Below are positions 10,985-64,000 of a stretch of DNA of 64,000 bases, piece after piece. The stretch is taken from the NCBI GenBank assembly GCA_002269645.1, contig NIVC01001237.1:338776-402775 (forward strand). Direction: 5' to 3'. A model generated the notes under the pieces. The model was not told the DNA's origin. It saw only the letters and a program-made list of their open reading frames with translations, and searched no databases. Position 1 is the stretch's first letter. Every line of letters starts with the position of its first letter. Position numbers and translations under genes: made by a program. Source of the stretch: Macrostomum lignano (lineage: Eukaryota).

Positions 10985-11575
10985 ATCGGCAGATAAATCA
11001 GTAGATAGATCAGTAGATAGATCAGTAGATAGATCAGTAGATAGATCGGCAGATAGATCGGATACTGATAGATCAACTGATAGATCAGTAGATAGATTAG
11101 TAGATATATCGGCAGATATATCGGCAGATAGATCGCTAGATAGATCGGTAGATAAATCAGTAGAAAGATAGGCAGATAGATCGGTAGATAGATTATAGTA
11201 GATAGATCGACAGATAGATAGATCGGCAGATAGATCGGCAGATAGATCGGCAGATAGATCAGCAGATAGATCGGCAGATAGATCGGCAGATAGATCGGCA
11301 GATAGATCAGCAGATAGATCGGCAGATAGATCGGCAGATAGATCGGCAGATAGATCGGCAGATAGATCGGCAGATAGATCGGCAGATAGATCGGCAGATA
11401 GATCGGCAGATATATCGGCAGATAGATCGGCAGATAGATCGGCAGATAGATCGGCAGATAGATCGGCAGATAGATCGGCAGATAGATCGGCAGATAGATC
11501 GGCAGATAGATCGGCAGATAGATCGGCAGATAGATCGGCAGATAGATCGGCAGATAGATCGGCAGATAGATCGGG
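10985..11575. repeat. 12-bp (GATAGATCGGCA)n array ending just before the GPCR ORF
   Basis: Visible; a related array is at 13950-14145. Confidence 0.95.
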
Positions 11576-11593: not shown

Positions 11594-14500
11594 ATGACCG
11601 GCAGTCTGTCGCTGGTGACGAGTCTCCGACCCAGCCGTCAGGAGGACGCCAATCAGCCTCGCTGTTTTGACATCTGGACTCACCTGACAGACAACTTTCT
11701 GCACCACAACCTGACCATGGACTACCAGTTCCACCCGGATCAAGTCGGCCAAGTGTTGTCATTCACAGTCCCTGAGGTGAACCAGTCGCAGAGCTGTCGC
11801 ATTCAGTACCTGCCATTCAAAACCGCAGCTTTCACCTGTCTGTTGCTAATTGTCCTACTCTCTCTGGCCGGTAATCTGATTGTGGCCATTAACCTGTACC
11901 TAAACCGGCGCCGATGGAGCAAAGTGAACTATTTTATCATGCACCTGGCATTGGCTGATTTGGCCGTACTAATTACTCCGCTAGTTGAGCTAATTACTAT
12001 GCTCACGCACACATGGTACGGAGGCAGATGGCTGTGCAAATTCTATCGAGTCATATCGGCTTTCGGCTTGTATTTGTCGTCATTTATTGTAACTTCGATA
12101 GCGATAGACAGGTATTTGGCTGTGAGCAGGCCTTTGAGCATCACGACGGCTGGGCGGAGAGCGCGACTGCTTCTGGCCGTTTCGGTCGGAGCCTCACTGC
12201 TGTGCAGTCTGCCGCAGGTGAGTCTGCGAGATGTGGCTTGTCTGGGGACTTACCTGGAAGATTGGGATATTTGGATATTGATAGATGACAGAGGGGAGGC
12301 ACAGGGGGAGGTAGAGGGGGAGGCAGAGGGGGAGGCAGAGAGGCAGAGGGGGAGGCAGAGAGGCAGAGCGGGAGGCAGGGAGGCAGAGGAGGAGGCAGAG
12401 AGGCAGAGGGGGAGGCAGGGAGGCAGAGGGGGAGGCAGGGAGGCAGAAGGGGAGGCAGAGAGGCAGAGGGGAGGCAGAGAGGCAGAAGGGGAGGCAGAGA
12501 GGCAGAGGGGGAGGCAGAGAGGCAGAGGGGGAGGCAGGGAGGCAGAGGGGAAGGCAGGGAGGCAGAGGGGAAGGCAGAGAGACAGAGGGGAGGGCAGAGA
12601 GGCAGAGGGGGAGACAGAGGGGGGGCAGAGAGGCAGAGGGGAGGCAGAGAGGCAGAGGGGGAGACAGAGGGGGGGCAGAGAGGCAGAGGGGAGGCAGAGA
12701 GGCAGAGAGGCAGAGAGGCAGAAGGGGAGGCAGAGAGGCAGAGAGGCAGAGGGGAGGCAGAGAGGAAGGCAGAGAGGCAGAGGGGGAGACAGAGGGGGGG
12801 CAGAGAGGCAGAGAGGAAGGCAGAGGCAGAGGGGGGAGACAGAGGGGGGGCAGAGAGGCAGAGGGGAGGCAGGGAGGCAGAGGGGGAGGCAGGGAGGCAG
12901 AGGGGAAGGCAGGGAGGCAGAGGGGAAGGCAGAGAGACAGAGGGGAGGGCAGAGAGGCAGAGGGGGAGACAGAGGGGGGCAGAGAGGCAGAGGGGAGGCA
13001 GAGAGGCAGAGGGGGAGACAGAGGGAGGGCAGAGAGGCAGAGGGGAGGCAGAGAGGCAGAGAGGCAGAAGGGGAGGCAGAGAGGCAGAGAGGCAGAGGGG
13101 AGGCAGAGAGGAAGGCAGAGAGGCAGAGGGGGAGACAGAGGGGGGGCAGAGAGGCAGAGAGGAAGGCAGAGGCAGAGGGGGGAGACAGAGGGGGGGCAGA
13201 GAGGCAGAGGGGAGGCAGGGAGGCAGAGGGGAAGGCAGGGAGGCAGAGGGGGAGGCAGGAAGGCAGAGGGGAAGGCAGGGAGGCAGAGGGGAAGGCAGGG
13301 AGGCAGAGGGGGGCAGGGAGGCAGAGGGGGAGGCAGAGAGGCAGAGGGGGAGGCAGAGAGGCAGAGGGGGAGGCAGAGAGGCAGAGGGGGAGGCAGAGAG
13401 GCAGAGGGGGAGGCAGAGAGGCAGAGGGGGAGGCAGAGAGGCAGAGAGAGGCAGTCAGCAATTTCTGCAGGGTTGGCATCGCTGTCGGGATTAAGTGGTG
13501 GGTTATTCCACAAGCACAAGGTCTCAGTCTGAGAGCCGCATTCGAATGGGGTTGCTAGGCGGCCGGGAATTCCCTAGTTAGCTGGTCTATTAGACATCCG
13601 TTGCAGCTGCCGTCGGTTTTCACAGTCCGTTGGCTTCTATCAGCTGTGCAGACGGCAGCAGCCTCTACAGCGTGGGAATTCGATAGAATTCGAAAATCCC
13701 ATCCCAGAAAGTATATAATTCCCCCCAACTTCCTTCCTGCTCTCTCACTGCTTCAGACTGCAGGTCGAGTATCTGCCTATACATATATGCATCCACTGGG
13801 CTGATTTTTCGTCTTCTCTTCAGAAATGCCTGCTCACCTCTGCTCAAGTCCATGCTTGATTTTTATTTTTTACAGCTGTGCAAATTGTTGGGTGATACTC
13901 TGATTTGGATAGCGAGCCGAGTTACGCAATTTTGAGGGTGGATTTATTGGTAGATAGATCGGCAGATAGATCAGTAGATAGATCGGCAGATAGATCGGCA
14001 GATAGATCAGCAGATAGATCAGTAGACAGATCAGTAGATAGATTGGCAGATAGATCGGCAGATAGATCAATAGATAGATCGGTAGATAAATCTGTAAATT
14101 GATCGGCAGGTAGATCGGCAGATAGATCGGCAGGTAGATCGGCAGCCAGAGCAAGTCAAGTCGAATGACCGAATGAGTCCGCACCCTTTCAGTGAGGGGT
14201 GAAATGCTTGGTTTTCACGCACCTAGTCATTTCTGCCTTGAAAAGAAGTTTAATAATATACATTTAAAGTAGCACTTTGCATGAAAAAAGTAATGCAGAT
14301 TGCTAACTTTGAGTTTTCAGTCAGCTGAAAGTTTGTGAGCAGTGTGAGCGTGAGGAGTGTTTTACTGGTTTTTTACTGTATTTGCTGTGCACTAATCTGC
14401 TTTAATAATCTCAGATACAGATTCAGCCAGGTACTCGTAGGTCTATAGCTGCGTGTTTAAAACAAACAAGGTCTCGGCCTTCTTCAACGGAAAGCAATTA

Positions 14501-26154: not shown

Positions 26155-29100
26155 GGATAGATAGATAGATAGATAGATAGATGGATAGATAGATAGATAG
26201 AGCAGCAGAGAAAGACACAAGAGCAGCAGAGAAAGACACAAGAGCAGCAGAGAAAGACACAATAACAGCAGAGAAAGACACAAGAGCAGCAGAGAAAGAC
26301 ACAAGAACAGCAGAGAAAGACACAAGAACAGCAGAGAAAGACACAAGAACAGCAGAGAAAGACACAAGAACAGCAGAGAAAGACACAAGAGCAGCAGAGA
26401 AAGACACAAGAACAGCAGAGAAAGACACAAGAACAGCAGAGAAAGACACAAGAACAGCAGAGAAAGACACAAGAGCAGCAGAGAAAGACACAATAACAGC
26501 AGAGAAAGACACAAGAGCAGCAGAGAAAGACACAAGAACAGCAGAGAAAGACACAAGAACAGCAGAGAAAGACACAAGAACAGCAGAGAAAGACACAAGA
26601 ACAGCAGAGAAAGACACAAGAGCAGCAGAGAAAGACACAAGAACAGCAGAGAAAGACACAAGAACAGCAGAGAAAGACACAAGAGCAGCAGAGAAAGACA
26701 CAAGAACAGCAGAGAAAGACACAAGAACAGCAGAGAAAGACACAAGAGCAGCAGAGGCCGCACACACACACACACACGCACACACACACGCACACACAGA
26801 GTGCTGGTGCAGCATGCCTGATGAATATTTCAGAGCAGCTCAGAGAATGTTAATATAATCCAGCTACACAAGTGGCAATTGAGCCGAGACCAGGCCCAGC
26901 TAATAAATAATTAATGAACCGGGCTGCTCACCAACTCTGAAGTCGATGTAGCCCTCCCCGCCGCTGATGAGTAGCACAGTGCGGCAGTCCTTGTCGCGGG
27001 AAATTGTTCCCGCGGGAGGAGGCTCGCGCTTGCCTAAAAAGCAGAAGAAGATCAACTGAGGGAGCTGTTCTCAAGTAAAGTTTATTATTCACAAGTGTTT
27101 TTTATAATCTGTGAATGAATTAATTAATTAGCGTGGCCTGATGTTGGCCCAGGACTTACTATTGACAATTGTTCGTCATTATACTCGTAATGGAGAAAAA
27201 TCGATTTCTGAGCACAGCAATCAATCGACGCGAATTTTAAGAGGTCCTGAGTTCGATTCTTTCTAAACTCAATAACTTAAATATAGGTTTCAACTGTTTT
27301 ACAAACCTTCCTTTGCCTGCTTTTCGCTATAGCAGTCACTCTCAGAGGCTGAAATTTATGATTTTGCTATTGAATTTGGGACCTTATAAGTACCTAATTA
27401 GCTAAGTGACTTTGAGACCTAATAGGTACCTAATTAGCTAATTGACTCTGAGACTTTATAGGTACCTAATTAGCTAATTGACCTGAGACTTTATAGGTAC
27501 CTAATTAGCTAATTGACTTTGAGACTTTATAGGTACCTAATTAGCTAATTGACTCTGAGACTTTATAGGTACCTAATTAGCTAATTGACTCTGAGACTTT
27601 ATAGGTACCTAATTAGCTAATTGACCTGAGACTTTATAGGTACCTAATTAGCTAATTGACTTTGAGACTTTATAGGTACCTAATTAGCTAATTGACTCTG
27701 AGACTTTATAGGTACCTAATTAGCTAATTGATTCTGAGACTTTATAGGTACCTAATTAGCTAATTGACTCTGAGACTTTATAGGTACCTAATTAGCTAAT
27801 TGACTTTGAGACTTTATAGGTACCTAATTAGCTAATTGATTCTGAGACTTTATAGGTACCTAATTAGCTAATTGACTCTGAGACTTTATAGGTACCTAAT
27901 TAGCTAAGTGACTTTGAGACCTAATAGGTACCTAATTAGCTAATTGACTCTGAGACTTTATAGGTACCTAATTAGCTAATTGACTTCAAGACCCTATAGA
28001 ATATAGTAGGTACCTAACTAGCTAATTGACTTTGAGACCTGATAGGTACCTAATTAGTTACATGGAGTTTAAAATATTAGGTACCTTAATTAGCTATAGA
28101 CCTTAGATTCATAATTAGCTGAACTGGTTTTAATAACACTAGGCATCCGGTAGTAGATGAACCAATCGTTGAGAAAAAATAGAAACTAAACTCTGCTCCG
28201 TACCTGGCACTGCAAGGAAGAATTTCACCGCATCCTTGTGACCGTGAAAAGACAACTGCGCCAAATCCATGCTGACGTGAGGCAGCAGACAGCTGAAGCC
28301 TTCAGAATCCTGAACGCCATCACCAGCAGAGCCGGAAGCCGGTTGCGTGACAAACGGCACGGTGACAATGATGCCATTGCTGGTACCGATCCACAATCGT
28401 CCGCAGGCGGCAAACAGAGAGGTCAGGCGAACCAAGGAGAAGCCGAGTCTTGACGTGCCCAGCACCTGGCTGATGTAGGGCTCAATGTCAATCTCTTGCA
28501 GCAGGGCGTGCGTGTGAGCGTGGAACAGGCGCAGCACGGTGTCTAAGCGGAAGCCGATCCAGACGCCCTCTCCAATGGGGCACAGCAGTCGGACTGTGCT
28601 ATCAGCTCTCGGATGCGCATCGAAGCTGGCGGCTACGCGGAGAGTTCTGGGATCGACCACTTTAATGGTGTTCTGCACGCCTATCCACAAGGCCGCGCCG
28701 CCTGCTGTGGCCGCCATCGCACGAACGGGTGCCGCCGCGTCGCTGACAGCCAACTCGTAGTAGCGAGACAGATCCCAGCACTGCTGCTGCTGCTCCATTG
28801 CGGTGGCAGCATTGGGATCCAATTGCCGTCTGCAGAACACCAACAGCGAACCGTTGGCCAGACCGAGGAATGCGCGGCCGCGCAGGTGGCAGATAGCCAC
28901 AATGGCATCCTTCAACTGCAGGCACTGCAGACAGCGTCGCCAATTGTTAACGGCCGAGTGGATGAATAGCAGGCCGTTTTGACAGCCGAGCCACATTGTA
29001 GAATCCGACAGGTGGGCACTGCGTCCGCTAGAGGCAGTCGGCTCGCTAGATAAGCCGCGTTCAATCAACAGGTCCGTGCCTGTCCGCTGCTTCTGCTGTC

Positions 29101-32100
29101 CCTGCGGCTGCTGCTGTTTTGGCGGCGAGCCAACAAGCGACAGGCTGCTGGCGTGCGGACTCTGGTTTGGAGACTCAACAGCTACGCACCGGACGAGTCG
29201 AGCTCGGTCTGACGCCAACTCGGACAGCGGATCAACATCTGCACCGCTGCCATTGCCGTCGATATTCGGCGCATCGTCCGGCTGAAAGTCGCCAGGCGCC
29301 GGGCCTGGAACGCAGGTGACGGCCAGCACCTGGGATTGGCACAGGGTGAAGGCTTGGAGCAGCTCGGCTGGACGGTTCGCATCGATGATGCACACCTGGC
29401 TCGGGCCGGCCGATGACTGCTCGCTAGTGCAGATCCACACTACCGAGGTGAGGCCCACATCTGGCAGCATGCCGAACTGGGCCTGCTGTCTGCTCAGCTG
29501 CTCGCTCAGGCTGGTCAACTCTGGACTATCGGGCGCGTCGCCAAGGTTGAACTGTCGTCGGAGACCAGCTGAAACAGCGGCTGCGCACCACACCTGTTGG
29601 AGCAGGGTTTCAAATCAAATTAGAAAGCTTTGTTGGGAGCGGGATACTGGACTGAGACACTGACAGTCCGATAGCAAACGTCTCTTAGATTTGGAACCAA
29701 ACACTTGGAACACCCTGACATCCACCTGTAGATTAATCAATTAATCAATAGACACTCAGAGACTTAAAGACACATTGACATCATTTAAATGTAATTTTTT
29801 CAATTGATAACCGGAGACACGCAGGACACACGGATATCATTCAGTAGAACTGACTTTCCCGAAAGACACCTTGAGACTCGAAGGACATCCTGACATCATT
29901 CAGTAGAACTGACTTTCCCAATAGCCACCTTGAGACTCGAAGGACATCCTGACATCATTCAGTAGAACTGACTTTCCAGATAGACACCTTGAGACTCGAC
30001 GGACATCCTGACATCATTCAGTAGAACTGACTTTCCAGATGGACACCTTGAGACTCGAAGGACATCCTGACATCATTCAGTAACACTGACTTTCCAGATA
30101 GACACCTTGAGACTCGACGGACATCCTGACATCATTCAGTAGAACTGACTTTCCCAATAGACACCTTGAGACTCGAAGGACATCCTGACATCATTCAGTA
30201 GAACTGACTTTCCAGATGGACACCTTGAGACTCGAAGGACATCCTGACATCATTCAGTAGAACTGACTTTCCCAATAGACACCTTGAGACTCGAAGGACA
30301 TCCTGACATCATTCAGTAGAACTGACTTTCCCAATAGACACCTTGAGACTGGAAGGACATCCTGACATCATTCAGTAGAACTGACTTTCCCAATAGACAC
30401 CTTGAGACTCGAAGGACATCCTGACATCATTCAGTAGAACTGACTTTCCCAATAGACACCTTGAGACTCGAAGGACACCCTGACAACATTCAGTAGAACT
30501 GACTTTCCAGATAGACACCTTGAGACTCGACGGACATCCTGACATCATTCAGTAGAACTGACTTTCCCAATAGACACCTTGAGACTCGAAGGACATCCTG
30601 ACATCATTCAGTAGAACTGACTTTCCAGATAGACACCTTGGGACTCGAAGGACATCCTGACATCATTCAGTAGAACTGACTTTCCAGATAGACACCTTGA
30701 GACTCGAAAGACATCCTGACATCATTCAGTAGAACTGACTTTCCAGATAGACACCTTGAGACTCGAAGGACATCCTGACATCATTCAGTAGAACTGACTT
30801 TCCAGATGGACACCTTGAGACTCGAAGGACATCCTGACATCATTCAGTAGAACTGACTTTCCCGAAAGACACCTTGAGACTCGAAGGACATCCTGACATC
30901 ATTCAGTAGAACTGACTTTCCCAATAGACACCTTGAGACTCGAAGGACACCCTGACATCATTCAGTAGAACTGACTTTCCAGATAGACACCTTGAGACTC
31001 GACGGACATCCTGACATCATTCAGTAGAACTGACTTTCCCAATAGACACCTTGAGACTCGAAGGACATCCTGACATCATTCAGTAGAACTGACTTTCCAG
31101 ATGGACACCTTGAGACTCGAAAGACATCCTGACATCATTCAGTAGAACTGACTTTTCAGATGGACACCTTGAGACATCATCAGCGCAGAACACAGTGTTT
31201 GCACAACCCGTAACGCACCCCTTTATTTTTGCAACAGTTAATGACTTAACAGGAATAAAAACATGCGTCAGAAACACGGCCACTCCCATAGTACGTCCGA
31301 TTAGAATTGGAACAATTTTTGTCGATTATTTAAAAGAGAAAAATAACTGCAACCACCAATGAAAACGCAACTGCACAGCACTCAGCACTGGTGAATGCCT
31401 GTTTACCGGAATCCTTGCCAGCCCAGACACAGAGTGGGCGGCAGTTCGACTCGAAAACAATGGTCGCATAGAAAAGCAACCGAATCGAGCGTGAAGCGAC
31501 GGTTTATTCTTCATAATCAATGAAGACAATAAACATATAATATAGAATATCTCAATTTTCTAGAGCCTAACAAAATGCTCGCCTGACGCATCAAAACACA
31601 ACAATGAAGCTATTTACGCGCATTGCATAGAAGCCCTTATAAATAGCATGTTCTGATAAAAAAAATGAAATTTAAGCGCTCAAATATTGAGAATAAGGTA
31701 CGGGGTTATGCTAAACGTCTGGGTTATTATAAACCTTTGAAGGAGAGCTTCAAAATCAGCTTTGACTTTGGAATACTTTATAGTATCTGCCGTGAAACAG
31801 CACTACTGTAGCACTTGGAACCATAGACAAAAGTTTTATCTCGCGGTCAAATTTTCCCGAGCTAATATAGCTATTTCATGCTCAGGCTGAAATCGGATGA
31901 ACGAGAGAATGAAAATTCGACTAGACTAAGGCAAGTCAAGAATCGAAATCTGCACTTTGAAAACACGTTTTTTTAAAAAAAGAAGGTAGCAGCATGGCGG
32001 ACTGTCCGTTGTCAACAAGTAACCTGCAGTTGGAACTAAACAGTGTAGAAGACGAGAAGCGCAAGATTTTGTCCATCTTCAAAGACGAAAGCGCAAAGTG

Positions 32101-54278: not shown

Positions 54279-56600
54279 TTTTTCTGTTTGACGATCCTAC
54301 AGACAATTTGCATTGTTTGTAGTAATGGATTGTTCTGCATTAAAAATGTGAATAATGATCGTCAAATTGCTAAACAATGTGCTAACGGATATCATAATAT
54401 CGGATATATATCGGATATCGCCGTTTCTCTTTGTCCAAAGGAGAAACCAGGATCGGCGGCTGTCTTTGAGCTTCATTAGCTAGTTGGATGCCCTTTGACG
54501 TAGTAATTATGTTAAACCCTAGCTGTCTCCAGAGTCCAGGCCGAGCATACTTATTGCTAACTGTCAATGACAAGAAATTATAGCAATTAATTCCGTGGTT
54601 TTACTACGTGTACATGCACATGCAAGTTTGAAAGCAAACATGGTACTTGCTAATGGGTGATGCGCGCGGGTCGCAATCAAGGATAAAAGTCTCTCAATTT
54701 TTACTAACACACAGCGGAATTTAATAAGTTATTATTTACATGCATTACATATACTGTACATGTATATGTACATGTAAGTACATGTATTGACATTAAATGT
54801 TTAACATCACCTATGGCGACCTACATGTGGCGGAATGGGCGACACGAGATTGAACTACTGCTGTGACAGCAGCGGAAGGCTTCGTCTGGTGTTCGGCAGC
54901 TGAGAGACAGACACACTTAGGACACAATTTGTTTTTCTTTGTGCTGCGGCTGGACTGAGTGCTCTGTAACGCATTCCTCTCGGCTGACGACGATGCATTG
55001 GCCATGCACCACTACTACGAAGAGAAGCGCCTCAGCGTGCTTGGCTACGCTGGCGACCTCGCATTCATGTCATCAACCGAAGGTGACAGCGCCAGATCGA
55101 CAGGCTGGAATTAAGCAATTGGCTTCTAGAGTCGCGCCCTCGTGGTCCACACTTAAGACCAAGTTGGTCGCCGTGCTGGCTGACATTCCCAGGGGACCTG
55201 ACAGCTCGCTCAGTTCCCGTGGTTCACCTATACCTCTAGTGCACCCCACGTAGAAGAGAAAATCACGCGGCGAACAGAGGACTCGACTGGCGGCCTAACT
55301 AGCATCCGAGACCCACTGGGAAGCAAGCTGTCGAAACGACGTCAGTTTTCCATGTCGATTCGATGGATGCAAATGTCGCGGTGCAACGACGTTGTTTCGA
55401 GGTGGGTGGTACACCTTCATTTCAACGTCGATGCTGCGTCGTTTCGCCTTCGTTCTGCGACGTCGATTCGATGTTGCTTTACACGTATATGTACACACAT
55501 GTACAATCGATTTGAATAGTATCATTGCACCCACAAGTGCATATTGGAAAATAACGAATGCAAGACAAGAAGTCCAAGACAGAGTTCATATGCGTGTGCA
55601 ACATGCACGGCAACAGTTTGCGAAAATCATTGACCGCAAGTATAATTGCTAGGACCGTGACGAAACAAGATATGAGCAATTTACATGTATTTGACACTCA
55701 CACTCACACGTATTGTATTAATTTGCTCAGGTTGCATGTAAAAATCAACTAAAATATACTTTACGAGTATAAAATTGAATGGACATGTAAAGGATCAGCG
55801 AATCCACAAACGCCAACAGACTGCTCACGCAACAAATCGACACTTAAAAGACAATTACAATAATAGGCTCGTAAAGAAATACCATTGCTTATCAATTTCG
55901 GTGCAACTGTGATTACACACAACAGGCTATGTACAGAACAGGGCACCGTATATCCGCGCGCTTTGCCCACATTTGCCAGACAGAACTCCATGGCCCTCTT
56001 GTTGATGGAAAAATGGATCATGAAAAATAGTAACTCGAAAATCAGTTCCATAATATCACCTGATGGGTCTTATGGGGGACACTTCTTCCTCGATCCCAGA
56101 GTCATCATCACTTTCAGGAGGAGACACGCTTTGGGAATTTCCTGGCTCCCAATCACGTTCTTGCCAATCGTCATCAGCATCATCAGAATCTTCTTCAGCT
56201 GGCGCCACGTGCTCAATGGACTCCTGCCCTGTGGCCTCTTGCAGGCCTTCAGAATCACGAAGTAGCTGCATCATGGTGAGGCGAGCCATCCGGTTTGTCT
56301 TCTGTGCAGACGCCATCGTCTCAAAGTCAGTAGCTGTAATAAATCAGATTATTTAATTTAATATAATAATTTAATATAGCCCTTTGTTCTAACTTTTTGG
56401 CTATAGGAATATTATCCAAGAAAACAAGATGGATTTCATTTGACTTAGTTATACAAATTTAGATGTCAAAATAATTTAACAATTGGAAATTAGGATTACC
56501 CAATCTATCTTTTAATCTATCTTAAACTTAAGATATTATCATCATCTTCTTCTATACACTAAAATTCATCTTTATACATTCTAAAGATATAAACTCCAAG

Positions 56601-56830
56601 ACAGTGGAGTCGCAGCTGGGCTCGGCGCACTCCGGCTGCTCCATACCGCGCCTTTCAAGCTGACGAGAGCGTCGGGACAGAGGCGGCCTGTACTAGAGGG
56701 CCCAGCTGCAAGGTGGCGACTTCAACAGGAGGGTCACGTGATCCAGGCCGAGAGCTGCTGCCCCCAAGCCTCTACAGGACGTCCTGCTGCTCAACTTGCA
56801 GGGCCATTTAGGCTGCCCAGGTGCGAATCT
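56601..56830 (+). mobile_element. Degraded non-LTR retrotransposon (RTE-like) RT C-terminal fragment
   Basis: Frameshifted pieces TVESQLGSAHS/RLLHTA..ADESVGTEA..RWRLQQEGHVIQAESCCPQ/QDVLLLNLQG resemble the LD..Y.RLLR..RRLRLAGH region of RTE-clade ORFs (from memory). Confidence 0.5.
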
Positions 56831-57284: not shown

Positions 57285-57758
57285 GGAAATTCTCATTTTT
57301 TAGCACAAAAATTGCTATTGCTTTTGATAGGAGGCAGATCCAGTGTTCATCTTTTGATATGTTGTGCCCTTCTTATTGCTCTATCGATATTTGTAAAGCT
57401 TTTCGTGCAAAGAATTAGGATTCTATGTAATTTTTTTATTCTACATATACGTACGTTTTATGAATCTATTTTATAATCTCTGTTACAGATAATTGTTATA
57501 CAGTCCGCTAAGAATGATGAAATAGACTCAAAAAGCCAAAGAACTGAGCCGTGCCATTTTAATGGTTTTTAGGCACAAGATACATGTACGTGCAAATGTA
57601 CGTTGAATAAAAAATTCACAAAGAATCCTAATTCTTTGAACGAAAACCTTTATGAATATCAATAGAGCAATAAGAAAGGCACAACATTTCAAAAGATGAA
57701 CACTGGATCTGCCTCCTATCAAAAGCAACAACAACTTCTGTGCTGAAATGAGGCTTCC
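57285..57758. mobile_element. Foldback/MITE-like element with about 155-bp inverted arms (57285-57441 and 57605-57758)
   Basis: GCTTTTGATAGGAGGCAGATCCAGTGTTCATCTTTTGA is found as its reverse complement at about 57690-57727; the arms match over most of their length. Confidence 0.8.
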
Positions 57759-58372
57759 CGTCCTTATACTTAAGTCGTCCTTGTGTACACCCTGTCTGAG
57801 CGTGCGTATGAGTGCGTGCTTGCGAACAGTATTGGCGCGCTTGTACATGTACATATATGTGCTCAGGGGTCAGCGGAATGGGCGAGGTCGTAAATACAGC
57901 TTTGCAGCAGGTGTACAGGAAATTTCAACAGAAGCAGCGGTTGCCATTGGTACAGAACATCACCAAAATCGGGCCGCCATGCAGGTAACTTCTTCATCTA
58001 TCAGCTTCCATCAAGGATAGCATCTTTTCAGATAATGTTAAACAGAGTAGTTTACAAAGACTCGATCAACTCACATGGCCACTTCGGTTCGGAACTATCT
58101 TACTTCATAGCCAACGAGTTGTTAGCTAAAGAAAGCGAAGACTACACAGTTTGTAGAACTTGCCTTTGATTTTGAAAACTTCAACAGCAGACGATAACTG
58201 AGATCTATGCAGACGCTTACATTAGATTAACTAACGACATTAGCTAACGACCAACCAACTAAGTCATCGAAAGTTAAAGATTGATGGTCAATACACACTG
58301 CAACTTTTTCTAGCAAAATCTAGAATTGTGAATCACAGTTTGCCTTTAACACTTGCTAAGTTCTGTACCAGC

Positions 58373-59569
58373 TCAATCTGAGTCAAATAGCCAGCTTGCA
58401 TCTGTGAAATCCTTGTGAACCCAAACAAGGTTATAATCCTCAAAGCCTATATCCTTAATGTCGATAACTCTGGTCGGATGGACCATAGTCCTCGGGCTGT
58501 AGCGCCTCTCAGCGAAGAAGCTGATCATGAACTGGCGCTCCTCCTCGCTCATGTGCTTCCTCAGCCACTCCATGTGCACCACGGGAATCGTGACGCTGTC
58601 GAACAGCTTCTGCGCGCTCTTGAAGAACTCGCCTTCGCCTCCTTCGATGTCGACCTTCAACACGACCAGCTTCGTGTCGATGAGCGGCACGATGGAGTCC
58701 GCGGTGGCCGACATCACCGGGATCGTGTCGACGACGGCCCTGCCGAACTTGGTGGCGCCGCCCATGTTGCAGTCCTTCGGGAAGTTCAGGTACATGAGCG
58801 ACACCTGCCTGCTGACGAAGTTCCACAGCAGCTGCAGCTTGTGAGGCGAATTGGCCGCCTCGGCTGACAGCTTGATTCGAATCAGGTTGCGGATGTTCGC
58901 ATCCAGCGCGATGACGGGCACTCCGAGATCGAGGACCGGCAGGCTGAACACGCCGATGTTCGAGCCGACGTCCACGAAGGTGACGGGCGACTTGGCGGCC
59001 AGCTTGCGAATGATTTGCTGCATGATGCGGACGTTCCGCTCCTCGAAGACATGCGAGCCATGAATTAAGGTCGAGATCAGGTCAGGACTTGAGTACACGA
59101 AACTGACAACGTTTCTCTGGGTGAGGGGGCTTCTGATGTATGTCTGAAGGCTTCCAGCTCTGACGCCTTCGATGAGCACGTGCGGCAGGTGCTGCTTGAG
59201 TCGACAAAGTGGAAACGCGCTGTCCACGATGGTGTAGGCGGCGGCGCCTTCGCAGATGCTCTCGCTGATGGACTTGTGCAGGAAGTTGACGCTGCGGAGC
59301 TCTCGATAGGCGTCACACATTTTTTCTGGCAGCGGTCTGTGAATGACCGGCGGGATGCTCGATTGGTAGGATTTCTGCAGTGCCGGTTGGTTCAAGGCGT
59401 TGGACTCAGATTCTGTCCTGCGATATTCGCGTACTGCACTCTTTGGTTTTGCTGCCACGGCTTTGTCTTGTGACGGATTGAGGCTGCGGCTGCTGTGGTA
59501 TACTTCACTCACAAGCCAGACGGATATAGCTGTCAATAAAATAACAAGTGCAGTTTTCGACCACTTCAT
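58373..59569 (-). CDS. FkbM-family (Methyltransf_21-like) SAM-dependent methyltransferase with N-terminal signal anchor, copy A (398 aa, intronless CDS)
   Basis: MKWSKTALVILLTAISVWLVSEV hydrophobic anchor; motif I FVDVGSNIG; VIALDAN; LKVDIEGGE. Acceptor ttgcag just upstream of the ATG. Confidence 0.88.
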   Translation of the reverse strand: MKWSKTALVILLTAISVWLVSEVYHSSRSLNPSQDKAVAAKPKSAVREYRRTESESNALNQPALQKSYQSSIPPVIHRPLPEKMCDAYRELRSVNFLHKSISESICEGAAAYTIVDSAFPLCRLKQHLPHVLIEGVRAGSLQTYIRSPLTQRNVVSFVYSSPDLISTLIHGSHVFEERNVRIMQQIIRKLAAKSPVTFVDVGSNIGVFSLPVLDLGVPVIALDANIRNLIRIKLSAEAANSPHKLQLLWNFVSRQVSLMYLNFPKDCNMGGATKFGRAVVDTIPVMSATADSIVPLIDTKLVVLKVDIEGGEGEFFKSAQKLFDSVTIPVVHMEWLRKHMSEEERQFMISFFAERRYSPRTMVHPTRVIDIKDIGFEDYNLVWVHKDFTDASWLFDSD

Positions 59570-60368
59570 TGTTCCTGCAATTTATGTGTTTTTTATTCAG
59601 TTTTAATTTGCATTTCGACCGGACTGCCGTCAGGTGTGCTCCAAAGAATTCAGCACTAAATTCTCACAATACGAGCTATCTCAATATCTGAGCTTCTAGA
59701 TTGCAAACTAAGCAAGCAGGCATTCTGTTCGAAGGAGCACTTACAAAGTCTGTCTGTAAAAATGCACTAAACAGACAGTAACAGCAGAAAGGTGCTTTTT
59801 CTCATCAGCACCGGCACCCAAGCACCAAGGGGCGGAAGTTAAAAATCAACACATGTGCATGTACTGTACTCAAGCAGCTTACCTTTATTGGAATCAATTT
59901 TTTCGCTTTCTTAAATCAAAACTTTGCCTATAGCTACCGGTAGTTTATGGAATCGAGCTGTTAAACTTTGTCGAGTACGGTCCGTTGTCTATCGTTATGA
60001 ATCATTGGCCCGTCTCCCTGAGCACGTCTCCCTGCGGTGTATTTGAGCGCTCTCTCCTACAGTCCGTGTTAAATAACTCTTATTGCTGAGGTCTCTAGAA
60101 AGACAAGAGAAGAAAGTGAGGAAGAAGAGTCGAAGCCTCGGGAGTCACGAAGCTGTAGAATGTATTTGAAGAGTCTTAAAAGCAAATAAATTCAGTATTG
60201 GACGCATTGCTCTGTCGATCTAATGGGTCACTTAGTAAACATCATTGAGTAAATTAAGCAAGGTAAAAACTGCACTGGACAGAATATTTTTACTCTGGAA
60301 TTAGAGAACTATAAGTATCAACCATTCAGAAAACCGAAGACAGCCTCAGGAAACACGATACAAAGATC

Positions 60369-60824
60369 GGGTGCAGAGCAGCTCAGTGGTATACGCGTCT
60401 GACTCACGCCCCACGGCCTCTGGTTCGATTCCATGTGTTCAGGAGAATTGGCCATGCAGTTGTGGGGGGGGGTTCGTGCGATTTACATCCGTGAGGCGAA
60501 TCTTGGGGGCGATTACCACGTTGCTCACCCAAGCACTGGCGCTGATCTTCTCGATAATTTGCTCCTCCGTTACCGCCTCCTTACCGCCACCGTTACCGTG
60601 TCTGAATCACTGGGTGAGCATCCAGGACAACTCATTCAATACTAGGCCAATACTTCCCAAGCACTACTGTCCATTTGTTGCCGTACGAACATTGTTTCCA
60701 AGTGCAGTCAAATTAATTTGTGGCTAAATTGGAATCTCGGCTGGGCTCCGCTCGTGCAATTAACGGCCTTGAGGGCCAACCCCAAGGCACAGTGAAGTGT
60801 ACATGCCTAACGATAAATAAATTT
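60369..60824 (+). mobile_element. tRNA-derived SINE (about 455 bp), second family
   Basis: Head GCAGCTCAGTGGTATACGCG..GGTTCGATTCC (A and B boxes), unique body, tail ending ACGATAAATAAA. A diverged tail copy is at 63874-63947 (-). Confidence 0.75.
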
Positions 60825-61654
60825 AGGGCCGCTGTACACTCCTGTGTGAGTGTGTGCCTGCGCGTATGACTGCGTACGTATCCGCGCGCTTGTGTGCCTG
60901 CTCAGGGGAGTCGGCGGAATGGGCAGCAATGCCTCTAGCCGGTTGTGTGACAATGTCGCTTAAAGTGCGCCAGGGTGCACACAGCCTCCGGCCTCTAATT
61001 ATCAATGTAAATAATTGAACTATTTTTAGCAGCTAAAATTAAATCATTTAACATCTAACCATATATTCTTGTTGATCAACTTAAACCAGCCGTTTGAAAG
61101 GTAAAATTTCTGGACCCAAGCTGACCCAAGCTGACCCAAGCTGACGTTAATGATGAGCAGCACAATTGACTTCAGAGCTAAGTCTATTGAGAAGCAATCC
61201 GGTCGAGTGCAAACAACACTGCTTATTGAGTGTTTACCTGCTTGATTTACTTAATGACGTTCGCTCAATGTCGATGACCCTTTGAATTGACAAAACAAAC
61301 AGTAAGTTCTCGGTATTTGTTTTGTGGCCTTGGAGCCTTCAGTTTTCGCTAATTCTACCATCAGCTGTGCAACCATTGCAAACAGTTTAGTTTCATAGTT
61401 ATAGAACTCATATATAACAGGCAACGCAGGTAAATCATATGCTGAGATTAAGTAACAAAATTATAGACAGCGGAATTTATCAGTTCATTTATCAGGTAAG
61501 CTGTTCGATTAACAATTTGCACCTGCATGCATACACATGACGATGAGCCAACTGTCAGAAGACGCTTAGCTTATGCAGTTCACAATCTGAATATATAAAT
61601 GCCAATAAAAAGTAAATCAAAAAATCACTTACATTGCAGGTACGAGCAGGAACA

Positions 61655-62857
61655 ATGAATTGTTCGAAAACTGCACTTGTCATTTTATTGATGGCGATGT
61701 TTATCTGGATTCTGAGTGAAATATATCACAGAAGCCGCAGCAGCAGACTCAGTTCGTCACAAGACAAAGCCGTGGCAGCAAAACCACAGAGTGCAGTACG
61801 CGAATATCGCAGGACAGAATCTGAGTCCAACGCCGTGAACCAACCGGCACTGCAGAAATCCTACCAATCGAGCATCCCGCCGGTCATTCACAGACCGCTG
61901 CCAGAAAAAATGTGTGACGCCTATCGAGAGCTCCGCGGCGTCAACTTCCTGCACAAGTCCATCAGCGAGAGCATCTGCGAAGGTGTCGCCGCCTACACCA
62001 TCGTGGACAGCGCGTTTCCACTGTGCCGACTCAAGCAGCACCTGCCGCAGGTGCTCATTGAAGGCGTCAGAGCTGGAAGCCTTCAGACATACATCAGAAG
62101 CCCCCTCACCCAGAAAAACGTCACCAGCTTCGTCTACTCCAGTACCGACTACATCTCGGCTACAATTCACGGCTCGCACATCTTCGAAGAGCGGAACGTC
62201 CGCACCATGCAGCGAATCATTCGCAAGCTGGCCGCCAAGTCGCCCGTCACCTTCGTGGACGTCGGCTCGAACATCGGCGTGTTCAGCCTGTCGGTCCTCG
62301 ATCTCGGAGTGCCCGTCATCGCGCTGGACGCGAACATCCGCAACCTGATTCGAATCAAGCTGTCAGCCGAGGCGGCCAATTCGCCTCACAAGCTGCAGCT
62401 GCTGTGGAACTTCGTCAGCAGGCAGGTGTCGCTCATGTACCTGAACTTCCCGGAGGACTGCAATATGGGCGGCGCCACCAAGTTCGGCAGGGCCGTCGTC
62501 GACACGATCCCGGTGATGTCGGCCACCGCGGACTCCATCGTGCCGCTCATCGACACGAAGCTGGTCGTGTTGAAGGTCGACATCGAAGGAGGCGAAGGCG
62601 AGTTCTTCAAGAGCGCGCAGAAGCTTTTCGACACCTTCACGATTCCCGTGGTGCACATGGAGTGGCTGAGGAAGCACATGAGCGAGGAGGAGCGCCAGTT
62701 CATGATCAGCTTCTTCGCTGAGAGGCGCTACAGCCCGAGGAGCATGAACAATCTGACGAAGTTGATCAACATCAGCCACACAGGGTATCAGGGAGATGAC
62801 CTTGTTTGGGTGCACAACAACTTCGAGGATGCAGGCGGTATTGTTAACTTAAATTGA
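61655..62857 (+). CDS. FkbM-family methyltransferase with signal anchor, copy B (400 aa; ATG at 61655 preferred over the track's 61634 TTG start)
   Basis: Inverted paralog of copy A with the same motifs and the same GGAACAATG start context. Confidence 0.88.
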   Translation: MNCSKTALVILLMAMFIWILSEIYHRSRSSRLSSSQDKAVAAKPQSAVREYRRTESESNAVNQPALQKSYQSSIPPVIHRPLPEKMCDAYRELRGVNFLHKSISESICEGVAAYTIVDSAFPLCRLKQHLPQVLIEGVRAGSLQTYIRSPLTQKNVTSFVYSSTDYISATIHGSHIFEERNVRTMQRIIRKLAAKSPVTFVDVGSNIGVFSLSVLDLGVPVIALDANIRNLIRIKLSAEAANSPHKLQLLWNFVSRQVSLMYLNFPEDCNMGGATKFGRAVVDTIPVMSATADSIVPLIDTKLVVLKVDIEGGEGEFFKSAQKLFDTFTIPVVHMEWLRKHMSEEERQFMISFFAERRYSPRSMNNLTKLINISHTGYQGDDLVWVHNNFEDAGGIVNLN

Positions 62858-63873
62858 GTAGCTATTTCAAATCTGTTTCACTGAAAGGCGTGTGTTATGA
62901 GCCATATATGCCAGCTTTGTAGACCATCTTTATGCGTGTTTTGTAGTCATAAAATGTCTGATTTTTTATAAGTGCGTAAGTGCGTTGATCGCTGCAGAAT
63001 GTAGTTTTTTGATTTTTACTCATTTTTGACTTGGTCCGTATCTACTAACAGCTAATAAAGATAAGAAAATTAATTTAGCTGGCTAGATTATATTTTTTGA
63101 ATATTGACATTGATATCTTCCTAAACTATTGGCAATACAATCTAAAGTCCAATATCTCAATACTCGTATACGGATTTATTGTGTTTATTCACTCGAAACC
63201 ACAGATATTGGAATAACTACATGCGGATGGGCCATTTAGCACATTTGCGTGTAAACAAACTGAAGTGTATTGTAAATGCACCTAATACTTGTAGCTCATA
63301 CCCGTACTTTGCGGATTAGCGTTTCCCTGTTATTGCCCTATTCATTTATGTCTATGACTGCGACCTTATTGCCTTCCGCCGAGTGTGTCTTCTCTCTAAG
63401 CAAGTCGTCGGCACGAAGCTACTCGTATTGCAGCGCAAACATAAAGCACAGGATTACAAGACATAACACTTACATTACAAGACATATTTTCAGTTCAGTA
63501 GTAAATTTTAATCAAGCATTTTAATGTACTTTTAAAGCAAGGCTCATTTATTGGCTCTTACCACTCAGCTTTAACCCTCTAACGGCGCCTTTCCACACCA
63601 CCCCGCCCCGCCCCAAATTTATTGCCTTTCTCAGAATTACCGCCTAAAATTCCAACCATGTACATTTCAGCTGACTCACTAATGTACGAGTACATTATTG
63701 CTGAACTAATTAGCAAGTTGTTTACGCCTGCAAGCTTGGCTTCCATAGATAAACTTACCAGTCATTTCAGCCATAAAATAGCGTTATGCATTCTTTGCTA
63801 CTTAACTGAAAGTAGAAAGTGTTTGTTTTACTAATTTTATAAATGTATGCCTGACTTGCACAGCGGTGATCAC

Positions 63874-63947
63874 TTTATTTATCGTCAGGGTTGGGTCTCA
63901 AGGCTGTAGTTGCAGGAGCAGAGCCAAGACGAGATTCCAATTTAGCC
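63874..63947 (-). mobile_element. 3' fragment of the 60369-60824 SINE family
   Basis: Reverse complement GGCTAAATTGGAATCTCG..CCTTGAG..CCAACCC..ACGATAAATAAA matches about 60722-60821. Confidence 0.7.
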
Positions 63948-64000
63948 CCGGATTAACAGTAGAACTACCAAGAGGGGGGGCGAAATTCCCCCCCCCTGAC

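What the first reader, a model, noticed from the sequence alone, without database searches (positions are those of the whole stretch)
58373..62857. Signal-anchored FkbM methyltransferase pair: candidate Golgi glycan O-methyltransferases
Seen: both copies have a short N-terminus, one hydrophobic anchor, a long stem and a C-terminal FkbM-type SAM domain, which is the layout of Golgi type II glycan-modifying enzymes. Known: the rhizobial FkbM-family enzyme NoeI O-methylates fucose; O-methylated N-glycans occur in planarians, snails and nematodes, and the animal enzymes are poorly defined. Inference: these may be flatworm glycan O-methyltransferases, a plausible undescribed glycan-methylation system.
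Basis: partly seen in the sequence, partly recalled or inferred. Interest (0 to 1): 0.75.

Follow-up and report, generated by a model that had tools for sequence, protein, structure and literature searches.

The report
Membrane-anchored FkbM methyltransferase gene pair
Two head-to-head, intron-free genes in a Macrostomum flatworm genome encode membrane-anchored enzymes of the FkbM methyltransferase family; they are plausible but unproven candidates for the still unidentified enzymes that methylate sugars on invertebrate glycoproteins.

Summary
Two intact ORFs (58373-59569 minus strand, 398 aa; 61655-62857 plus strand, 400 aa) are 86% identical. Both pass Pfam's FkbM threshold. Each has a 5-residue N-terminus, one hydrophobic anchor, a disordered stem of about 55 residues and a confidently folded C-terminal methyltransferase domain. 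All family-invariant SAM-motif and FkbM-signature residues are kept, and dN/dS is about 0.33. The closest relatives are Macrostomum lignano paralogs (79-81% identity).

The wider clade is large, uncharacterised and, among named members, almost entirely spiralian: molluscs, nemerteans, brachiopod, leech, rotifers, plus acoels. Most members share the anchor, and the charge bias around it points the domain into the lumen. The coding sequence is intronless in all six homolog loci checked.

The glycan O-methyltransferase reading is reasonable. The enzymes are reported as unidentified, planarian and mollusc glycans are heavily methylated, and the bacterial relative examined lies in a capsule gene cluster. 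No result here addresses substrate or Golgi location.

Verdict: a new member of a known but functionally unassigned kind, and a useful candidate rather than a demonstrated system.

The parts
58373..59569 (-). Gene A: intronless CDS, 398 aa plus stop, type II-like FkbM-family methyltransferase
   Evidence: ORF. PF05050 at 35.7 bits, above the 22.7 gathering cut-off. AF2 pLDDT 87.4. dN/dS about 0.33 in the globular part.
59498..59554 (-). Gene A signal anchor (residues 6-24, TALVILLTAISVWLVSEVY), preceded by the 5-residue tail MKWSK (59555-59569)
   Evidence: KD19 maximum of 1.89. AF2 helix at 5-28. Translation checked.
59318..59485 (-). Gene A stem (residues 29-84), predicted disordered
   Evidence: pLDDT below 50 for residues 34-69. 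No Pfam match there.
58376..59317 (-). Gene A globular domain (residues 85-398): an N-terminal lid-like subdomain followed by the Rossmann FkbM core. Motif I FVDVGSNIGVF lies at 58946-58978 and the KVDIEGGE signature at 58634-58657.
   Evidence: pLDDT mostly above 90. D200, G202, G206, K305 and E312 are invariant across 50 homologs. hhalign against a bacterial FkbM gives 99.1% probability.
61655..62857 (+). Gene B: intronless CDS, 400 aa plus stop, paralog of A (86% amino-acid identity)
   Evidence: ORF. PF05050 at 36.7 bits. BLASTP comparison with A.
61670..61726 (+). Gene B signal anchor (residues 6-24, TALVILLMAMFIWILSEIY)
   Evidence: KD19 maximum of 2.13. Translation checked.
61913..62854 (+). 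Gene B globular domain (residues 87-400). Motif I lies at 62252-62284 and KVDIEGGE at 62573-62596. Sequons sit at N155, N366 and N372.
59570..61654 (.). Divergent intergenic spacer of 2085 bp between the two start codons. An acceptor-like TTGCAG lies just upstream of each ATG (59575-59580 on the minus strand, 61634-61639 on the plus strand). Homology between the copies ends 9 nt upstream of the ATGs.
   Evidence: Sequence read directly. Repeat limits.

Best explanation
A and B are a divergently oriented, gene-converting pair of functional paralogs. Each encodes a single-pass type II membrane protein: a 5-residue cytosolic tail, a signal anchor, a flexible stem and a lumen-facing catalytic domain. 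That domain is a catalytically competent SAM-dependent methyltransferase of the FkbM family.

They belong to a large, uncharacterised, intronless clade that is mostly spiralian. The most likely job is O-methylation of sugar hydroxyls on N-/O-glycans or glycolipids as cargo passes through the Golgi. This would use SAM imported by a Golgi SAM transporter. Paralog multiplicity would reflect different acceptor or position specificities.

Shown here: family membership, fold, retained motifs, predicted topology, purifying selection and phyletic spread. Inferred: lumenal Golgi residence, methyl-transfer activity and glycan acceptors.
For: Domain and fold:
- FkbM match passes Pfam's threshold.
- The model is confident. 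Its best structural matches are FkbM methyltransferases of giant viruses and phages, with E down to 1e-12 and TMt up to 0.78.
- The invariant residues D200, G202, G206, K305 and E312 are present. Position 223 is acidic (Asp or Glu) in all 50 aligned sequences. N204, N250, N268, D307, E309 and E334 are at least 90% conserved. All are present in A and B.

Topology:
- One anchor in each protein.
- 100 of 152 homologs share the anchor. Their N-flank carries net +3.06 against +0.46 for the C-flank (Wilcoxon p = 1e-13).
- Named mollusc, nemertean, brachiopod and leech members nearly all carry the anchor.

Selection: dN/dS is 0.32-0.34 over the globular domain in three comparisons.

Link to glycans:
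- The best plasmid-borne bacterial relative lies inside a capsular polysaccharide cluster and aligns at 99.1% probability, E = 7e-19.
- Related multi-domain homologs also touch the V. cholerae RfbT O-antigen methylase family PF05575.
- NoeI methylates Nod-factor fucose (PMC6275314).
- Named relatives come from molluscs and other spiralians. Molluscs and planarians carry abundant O-methylated glycans (PMC6935376, PMC3155867, PMC5936828).
- Glycan methylation is thought to occur in the Golgi, and the enzymes are reported as unidentified (PMC5936828, PMC7614267).
Against: - No result here tests activity, location or acceptor.
- The founding FkbM enzyme methylates a macrolide, not a sugar (PMC12085832), so the family does not dictate a glycan substrate.
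- Foldseek against the PDB returns only generic class I methyltransferases.
- No glycosylation genes flank the pair or three homologs.
- No nematode protein appeared among named relatives, although nematodes methylate glycans. No planarian protein appeared either, although planarian proteins may simply be absent from the named sources.
- O-methylated glycans have not been reported for Macrostomum in anything I read.
- The PANTHER namesake of animal FkbM-domain proteins, Star, is a chaperone.
- TIGR01444 falls 0.2-0.6 bits short of its cut-off.
Confidence: 0.48

Rival explanations
1. They are lumen-facing or secreted FkbM methyltransferases, but the acceptor is not a glycan. It could be a small molecule, a lipid or a protein side chain handled in the secretory pathway or outside the cell.
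For: The architecture and motifs are the same as in the main explanation. The founding FkbM enzyme methylates polyketide macrolides (PMC12085832). PDB fold matches are substrate-agnostic. There is no glyco-gene neighbourhood.
Against: Where I could examine a bacterial relative in its genomic context, it sat in a capsular polysaccharide locus. A known, enzyme-less methylation exists on glycans of the same animal groups. Nothing I read reports a matching orphan methylated lipid or metabolite for spiralians.
Confidence: 0.25
2. They are Star-like, non-catalytic type II cargo chaperones. They would use the FkbM-like lumenal domain to bind and escort secretory or membrane ligands out of the ER.
For: PANTHER family PTHR34009 'PROTEIN STAR' is equated with Pfam Methyltransf_21 (PMC12403961). 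Star is a type II membrane ligand chaperone (PMC2950126). The overall topology is the same.
Against: Every family-invariant SAM-motif and signature residue is retained under purifying selection, which a pseudoenzyme would not need. The cytosolic tail is only 5 residues, whereas Star has a long cytosolic N-terminal region (my recollection, not checked here). None of the named relatives is annotated as Star-like. Many paralogs per genome fit an enzyme repertoire better than a dedicated chaperone.
Confidence: 0.1
3. One or both copies are non-functional: recent duplicates drifting toward pseudogenes, kept similar only by gene conversion, or unexpressed.
For: Overall dN/dS between A and B is 0.54, and the C-terminal tails are very divergent. 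No canonical AATAAA was seen within about 440 nt downstream of A. No expression data are available here.
Against: Both ORFs are intact over about 400 codons. dN/dS in the globular domain is 0.33, both between the copies and against an M. lignano paralog. All invariant residues are intact.
Confidence: 0.07
4. The genes are bacterial or viral contamination, or a very recent horizontal insertion, rather than true animal genes.
For: The coding sequences are intronless, and the family is abundant in bacteria and giant viruses.
Against: Paralogs with 88-91% nucleotide identity sit in long M. lignano contigs. Intronless homologs lie between multi-exon animal genes on chromosome-scale oyster and nemertean records and on a 329-kb limpet scaffold. 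The eukaryote-style signal anchor is shared across the clade. GC3 of 0.74-0.77 is not far from the 0.67 of a neighbouring GPCR ORF.
Confidence: 0.02

Closest known systems
Macrostomum lignano hypothetical proteins BOX15_Mlig026243g2, Mlig019506g3, Mlig003310g1 (UniProt: 'Methyltransferase FkbM domain-containing protein')
   Same: 69-81% amino-acid identity and the same anchor-stem-domain layout. The two M. lignano genes examined, Mlig026243g2 and Mlig019506g3, are intronless like A and B. A TMEM106-like gene lies nearby in both genomes.
   Different: They are not identical to any deposited protein. The stem and N-terminus differ. The M. lignano copies examined are single within +/-10 kb, not an inverted pair. 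Their function is equally unknown.
Uncharacterised type II FkbM-domain proteins of Spiralia (for example Ostrea, Mytilus, Lottia, Biomphalaria, Haliotis, Dreissena, Lineus, Tubulanus, Lingula, Helobdella, rotifers) and of acoels
   Same: Same domain with the same invariant residues, a typical length of 310-400 aa and an N-terminal anchor. The coding sequence is a single exon in the oyster, limpet and nemertean loci checked.
   Different: Only 20-25% identity to A and B. The cysteine pattern of the Macrostomum subfamily (C85, C106, C122, C267) is not family-wide.
Drosophila Star (namesake of PANTHER PTHR34009)
   Same: A type II membrane protein of the early secretory pathway whose family is equated with Pfam Methyltransf_21 (PMC12403961, PMC2950126).
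   Different: Star acts as a chaperone for EGFR ligands and has no reported enzymatic activity. It has a long cytosolic N-terminal region (my recollection). Direct similarity could not be measured here, and no close relative is annotated as Star-like.
Bacterial FkbM-family sugar O-methyltransferases (NoeI of rhizobial Nod factors, RfbT/WbeT of the Vibrio O-antigen, FkbM genes in capsule and O-antigen clusters)
   Same: Homologous catalytic core. hhalign against the S. meliloti capsule-cluster FkbM gives 99.1% probability and E = 7e-19 over 181 columns, with the GxNxG and KxDxEGxE motifs aligned. These enzymes methylate sugar hydroxyls (PMC6275314).
   Different: They are soluble cytoplasmic proteins of about 250-290 aa with no anchor or stem. 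Identity in the core is about 19-33%. NoeI itself was not compared.
FkbM-family methyltransferases of giant viruses and phages
   Same: They are the best structural matches, with E from 1e-12 to 1e-10 and TMt of 0.65-0.79. Some are fused to glycosyltransferase or capsule-synthesis domains.
   Different: 11-20% identity across the matches listed, no membrane anchor, and substrates mostly unknown (PMC12085832).

Membership tests
FkbM-family SAM-dependent methyltransferase (Pfam PF05050 / TIGR01444) | Match to PF05050 above the curated gathering score | tested here: met
   35.7 and 36.7 bits against a 22.7 cut-off.
FkbM-family SAM-dependent methyltransferase (Pfam PF05050 / TIGR01444) | Match to TIGR01444 above NCBI's cut-off | tested here: inconclusive
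   37.5 and 37.1 bits against a 37.7 cut-off, covering model positions 1-132 of 143.
FkbM-family SAM-dependent methyltransferase (Pfam PF05050 / TIGR01444) | Class I Rossmann fold with glycine-rich motif I and an acidic residue at the end of beta-2 | tested here: met
   DVGSNIG at residues 200-206. Position 223 is Asp or Glu in all 50 aligned sequences. The model shows alternating strands and helices at pLDDT above 90. PDB matches are class I methyltransferases.
FkbM-family SAM-dependent methyltransferase (Pfam PF05050 / TIGR01444) | FkbM signature K-x-D-x-E-G-x-E after the central sheet | tested here: met
   KVDIEGGE at residues 305-312. K305 and E312 are invariant. D307 and E309 are at least 92% conserved. 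The motif aligns to vKiDvEGhE of a bacterial FkbM.
FkbM-family SAM-dependent methyltransferase (Pfam PF05050 / TIGR01444) | SAM binding and methyl transfer | not testable with these tools
   Needs a biochemical assay.
Golgi type II glycan-modifying enzymes | Short cytosolic tail, single N-terminal signal anchor, stem and lumenal catalytic domain | tested here: met
   Prediction only. The positive-inside bias across 100 homologs gives p = 1e-13. No dedicated signal-peptide or TM predictor was available, so a cleaved signal peptide is not excluded.
Golgi type II glycan-modifying enzymes | Golgi residence | not testable with these tools
   Needs localisation of tagged protein.
Golgi type II glycan-modifying enzymes | Glycan acceptor | not testable with these tools
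   Indirect only: the bacterial relative examined lies in a capsule locus, and the phyletic overlap with methylated glycomes is partial (PMC6935376).
NoeI-type sugar O-methyltransferase | Specific similarity to NoeI beyond the shared FkbM core | not tested
   noeI was not in the one pNGR234a stretch I fetched, and I stopped there.
Star / PANTHER PTHR34009 | Type II membrane protein with an FkbM-like lumenal domain | tested here: met
   The equation of the family with Methyltransf_21 comes from PMC12403961.
Star / PANTHER PTHR34009 | Direct sequence relationship to Drosophila Star, or a PANTHER HMM assignment | not tested
   No PANTHER library was available and the Star sequence could not be obtained. 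None of about 40 named relatives is called Star-like.
Star / PANTHER PTHR34009 | Long cytosolic N-terminal region and ligand-chaperone function | tested here: not met
   The cytosolic tail is 5 residues. The length of Star's own N-terminal region is from memory. Chaperone function is not testable here.

The most novel reading that the evidence does not exclude
This intronless, type II FkbM clade would be the long-sought family of animal Golgi glycan O-methyltransferases. Its named members are spiralian plus acoel. It would make the 3-O-methyl-mannose, methyl-galactose and related caps of planarian and mollusc glycans, with paralog expansion encoding acceptor and position specificity. It may have entered an early spiralian ancestor by horizontal transfer from a bacterium or giant virus.
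Probability: 0.4. Interest if true: 0.8.

Novelty: new member of a known kind. Interest (0 to 1): 0.5.

Why it matters
O-methylation of glycans is widespread in molluscs, planarians and nematodes. It blocks exoglycosidases and is a target of fungal and animal innate-immune lectins. No animal enzyme that installs it has been identified in the literature I could search (PMC7614267, PMC5936828).

This clade of lumen-facing SAM methyltransferases is found, among its named members, mainly in spiralian phyla that include the known methylated-glycan producers. That gives a concrete, short candidate list. Macrostomum lignano is, to my knowledge, amenable to RNAi and transgenesis, so the question becomes directly testable.

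If the clade proves instead to be Star-like or to act on non-glycan substrates, that would also clarify a large unannotated gene family.

Tried and rejected
- Word-indexed homolog search with the window protein found only Macrostomum paralogs. Repeating it with a 50-sequence profile was swamped by candidates and gave little. A family consensus sequence worked.
- PDB searches by profile and by fold gave only generic class I methyltransferases. The one FkbM entry, 2py6, scored E = 0.008, so no solved structure informs the substrate.
- Pfam scans of long homologs looked for glycosyltransferase fusions and found only tandem FkbM domains.
- Neighbourhood checks in the window and at oyster, limpet and nemertean loci found no glyco-gene clustering.
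- The attempt to fetch NoeI from pNGR234a hit the wrong region (one search failed on the length limit), and I abandoned it.
- Two Star papers are not held, and the Star sequence was unobtainable.
- Literature searches for an identified animal glycan O-methyltransferase, or for FkbM in invertebrates, returned none.
- tRNA and Rfam scans of 56-64 kb were empty.
- Contamination and pseudogene readings were considered and rejected (see rival explanations).


Full report
**What is there.** Window 58373-62857 holds two intact, intronless ORFs in head-to-head orientation. Gene A runs 58373-59569 on the minus strand and encodes 398 aa. Gene B encodes 400 aa from the ATG at 61655 to 62857. The ORF lister begins B at a TTG at 61634, but the ATG aligns with A's start. 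The proteins are 86% identical. The DNA forms an inverted repeat, 58372-59578 against 61646-62858. No third copy lies in the window.

**Domain and fold.** Both proteins pass Pfam's gathering score for PF05050, the FkbM methyltransferase domain, at 35.7 and 36.7 bits against 22.7. Both fall just short of NCBIfam TIGR01444, at 37.5 and 37.1 bits against 37.7. An AlphaFold2 model built on a 50-sequence alignment is confident, with pLDDT 87.4 and pTM 0.81. It shows an N-terminal helix at 5-28, a low-confidence stretch at 34-69 and a well-ordered globular domain at 85-398 with a Rossmann-type core.

Against predicted viral structures, the top matches are FkbM methyltransferases of giant viruses and phages, with E down to 1e-12 and TMt up to 0.78. 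Against solved structures, only generic class I methyltransferases appear.

In the 50-sequence alignment D200, G202, G206, K305 and E312 are invariant. Position 223 is always Asp or Glu. N204, N250, N268, D307, E309, E334 and W383 are at least 90% conserved. A and B keep all of them. These residues form the SAM-binding motif I (DVGSNIG), the acidic beta-2 residue and the FkbM signature KVDIEGGE. The proteins therefore look like active enzymes, not decayed relatives.

**Topology.** Hydropathy gives one strong N-terminal segment at residues 6-24, after a 5-residue tail, MKWSK in A and MNCSK in B. The layout is a family trait. Of the 152 best relatives, 100 start with Met and have a hydrophobic stretch in their first 80 residues. 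Most members are 310-400 aa long, with the domain at the C-terminus.

In those 100 proteins the N-terminal flank carries a mean net charge of +3.06, against +0.46 on the C-terminal flank. The N-flank is the more positive side in 81 of 100 (Wilcoxon p = 1e-13). That is the positive-inside pattern of type II anchors, with the N-terminus in the cytosol and the domain in the lumen. Named mollusc, nemertean, brachiopod and leech members nearly all share the anchor. No dedicated signal-peptide predictor was available, so cleavage to a soluble lumenal form is not excluded. Either way the domain faces the lumen.

**Whose genes, and how are they evolving?** The nearest proteins are Macrostomum lignano hypothetical proteins at 69-81% identity. 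No deposited protein is identical. The two M. lignano genes examined are also single-exon. They share 84-91% nucleotide identity with A and B in the coding sequence only. A TMEM106-like gene lies nearby in both genomes. The window therefore comes from Macrostomum, either an unannotated paralogous locus or a close relative of the sequenced strain.

Identity between A and B is a mosaic:
- 97-100% over coding nucleotides 156-1056, with one dip to 79% in the window starting at nucleotide 456;
- 75% and then 54% toward the 3' end;
- unalignable flanks, starting 9 nt upstream of the ATG and 1 nt after the stop.

B's 3' end is closer to an M. lignano paralog (90%) than to A (75%). The simplest reading is an old duplication whose central coding part is kept uniform by gene conversion. 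dN/dS over the globular domain is 0.32-0.34 in all three pairwise comparisons, which indicates purifying selection.

**The wider family.** A profile search of 1.8 billion cluster representatives found 1418 relatives at E up to 1e-3, of which 420 were at E up to 1e-10. Every relative that carries an organism name is uncharacterised. The named relatives come from:
- molluscs: Dreissena, Mya, Haliotis, Batillaria, Ostrea, Saccostrea, Mytilus, the scallops Mizuhopecten, Pecten, Argopecten and Ylistrum, Lottia, Patella and Biomphalaria;
- nemerteans: Tubulanus and Lineus;
- a brachiopod (Lingula) and a leech (Helobdella);
- rotifers: Rotaria, Adineta and Brachionus;
- acoels: Convolutriloba and Symsagittifera;
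- Macrostomum itself.

No arthropod, nematode or vertebrate name appeared among them. Oyster, limpet and nemertean homologs also have a single coding exon, although their neighbours are multi-exon genes. Longer relatives are tandem arrays of two to five FkbM domains, not fusions to glycosyltransferases.

**What do they probably do?** Family, fold, retained motifs, lumenal orientation and selection are shown. The substrate is inferred. Four points favour glycans:
1. Invertebrate glycan methyltransferases are explicitly reported as unidentified (PMC7614267, PMC5936828).
2. Methylation is placed in the Golgi, because loss of the C. elegans SAM transporter reduces it (as cited in PMC5936828).
3. 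Planarian and mollusc N-glycans are heavily O-methylated on mannose, galactose, fucose and GlcNAc (PMC3155867, PMC5936828, PMC6935376), and the clade is prominent in these lineages.
4. The best plasmid-borne bacterial relative lies inside a capsular polysaccharide cluster and aligns with the family at 99.1% probability, E = 7e-19. NoeI is responsible for the methylated fucose on Nod factors (PMC6275314). The RfbT O-antigen methylase family overlaps weakly with related proteins.

Six points count against certainty:
1. The founding FkbM enzyme methylates a macrolide (PMC12085832).
2. No glyco-genes neighbour the pair or its homologs.
3. Nematodes methylate glycans but contributed no named relative.
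4. Nothing I read describes the Macrostomum glycome.
5. Annelids (16 copies in Alvinella) and amphioxus also carry FkbM-domain genes (PMC12403961, PMC12905397). I found nothing on whether their glycans are methylated, so co-occurrence could not be scored for them.
6. No result here measures activity or location.

PANTHER names the animal FkbM-domain family PTHR34009 'PROTEIN STAR' (PMC12403961). Drosophila Star is a type II membrane protein that escorts the EGFR ligand Spitz out of the ER and has no known catalytic role (PMC2950126). The shared architecture makes a Star-like chaperone a real alternative.

I rate it low, at about 0.1, for four reasons. All catalytic-motif residues are conserved under selection. 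The cytosolic tail is only five residues. No close relative is annotated as Star-like. Many paralogs per genome suit an enzyme repertoire better than a dedicated chaperone. I could obtain neither the Star sequence nor a PANTHER library, so the direct comparison is untested.

**Verdict.** 'System' overstates a duplicated member of a large family that is already auto-annotated. Novelty is a new member of a known but functionally unassigned kind. Interest is moderate, at 0.5. The pair is ordinary as a sequence, but it points to a concrete, testable candidate family for a recognised gap in invertebrate glycobiology.

Noticed in passing
window 58372-59578 and 61646-62858: Homology between the two copies is confined almost exactly to the coding sequence. 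Identity is 97-100% in the centre and falls to 54% at the 3' end. B's 3' end is closer to an M. lignano paralog than to A. This pattern suggests ongoing gene conversion between old inverted duplicates.
   Followed up: partly
L001-L003 (M. lignano), L006 (Ostrea edulis), L007 (Lottia gigantea), L008 (Lineus longissimus), each 10001 to about 11100-11500: Every homolog locus examined has a single-exon coding sequence, whereas neighbouring genes are multi-exon. Either intronlessness is an ancient family trait, or the clade arose by retroposition or horizontal transfer.
   Followed up: partly
window 59575-59580 (minus strand) and 61634-61639 (plus strand): An acceptor-like ATTGCAG lies 5 nt (gene A) and 15 nt (gene B) upstream of the start codon, followed by a shared CAGGAACA-ATG. 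This could be a spliced-leader trans-splice site or the end of a 5'UTR intron.
   Followed up: no
window 57298-57447 and 57599-57748: A large inverted repeat with 150-nt arms, 89% complementary and 151 nt apart, lies about 600 nt downstream of gene A. It may be a foldback or MITE-like element.
   Followed up: no
window 1-48500: This part of the window is packed with dozens of minisatellite arrays, with periods of 4-97 nt and up to 177 copies. They explain the swings in GC skew and many of the long 'ORFs' there. The last 15 kb, which holds the gene pair, is free of them.
   Followed up: partly
window 11594-13558 (+) and 28139-29593 (-): A rhodopsin-type GPCR ORF (7tm_1, E = 2e-21) has a 3' part that runs into a (GAGGCAGA)n array. 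Separately, there is an ORF encoding a WD40 propeller. These are ordinary animal genes unrelated to glycosylation.
   Followed up: no
window 54931-55202 and 56605-56710; L001 20485-21045: Pieces with 73-79% nucleotide identity to the TMEM106-like gene that neighbours the M. lignano paralog P0002. This suggests the FkbM-TMEM106 neighbourhood was duplicated as a block.
   Followed up: no
L003 10001-11515 (M. lignano P0001, 504 aa): This paralog contains an internal tandem duplication of about 130 residues that spans the lid subdomain and motif I. It is either a real partial duplication or an assembly or annotation artefact.
   Followed up: no
window 60371-60440, with 60713-60762 and 63907-63956: The intergenic spacer has a stretch with tRNA-like A-box and B-box motifs (GCTCAGTGGTA ... 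GGTTCGATTCC), but ARAGORN and Rfam find nothing. A nearby 50-nt segment has an inverted copy at 63907-63956. It may be a SINE or MITE remnant.
   Followed up: partly
proteins P0007, P0011, P0012, P0016, P0047 (relatives from unnamed eukaryote-sized contigs or metagenomes): Relatives of 850-1450 aa carry two to five tandem FkbM domains behind one N-terminal anchor. They are either multi-domain methyltransferases or merged tandem gene models.
   Followed up: no
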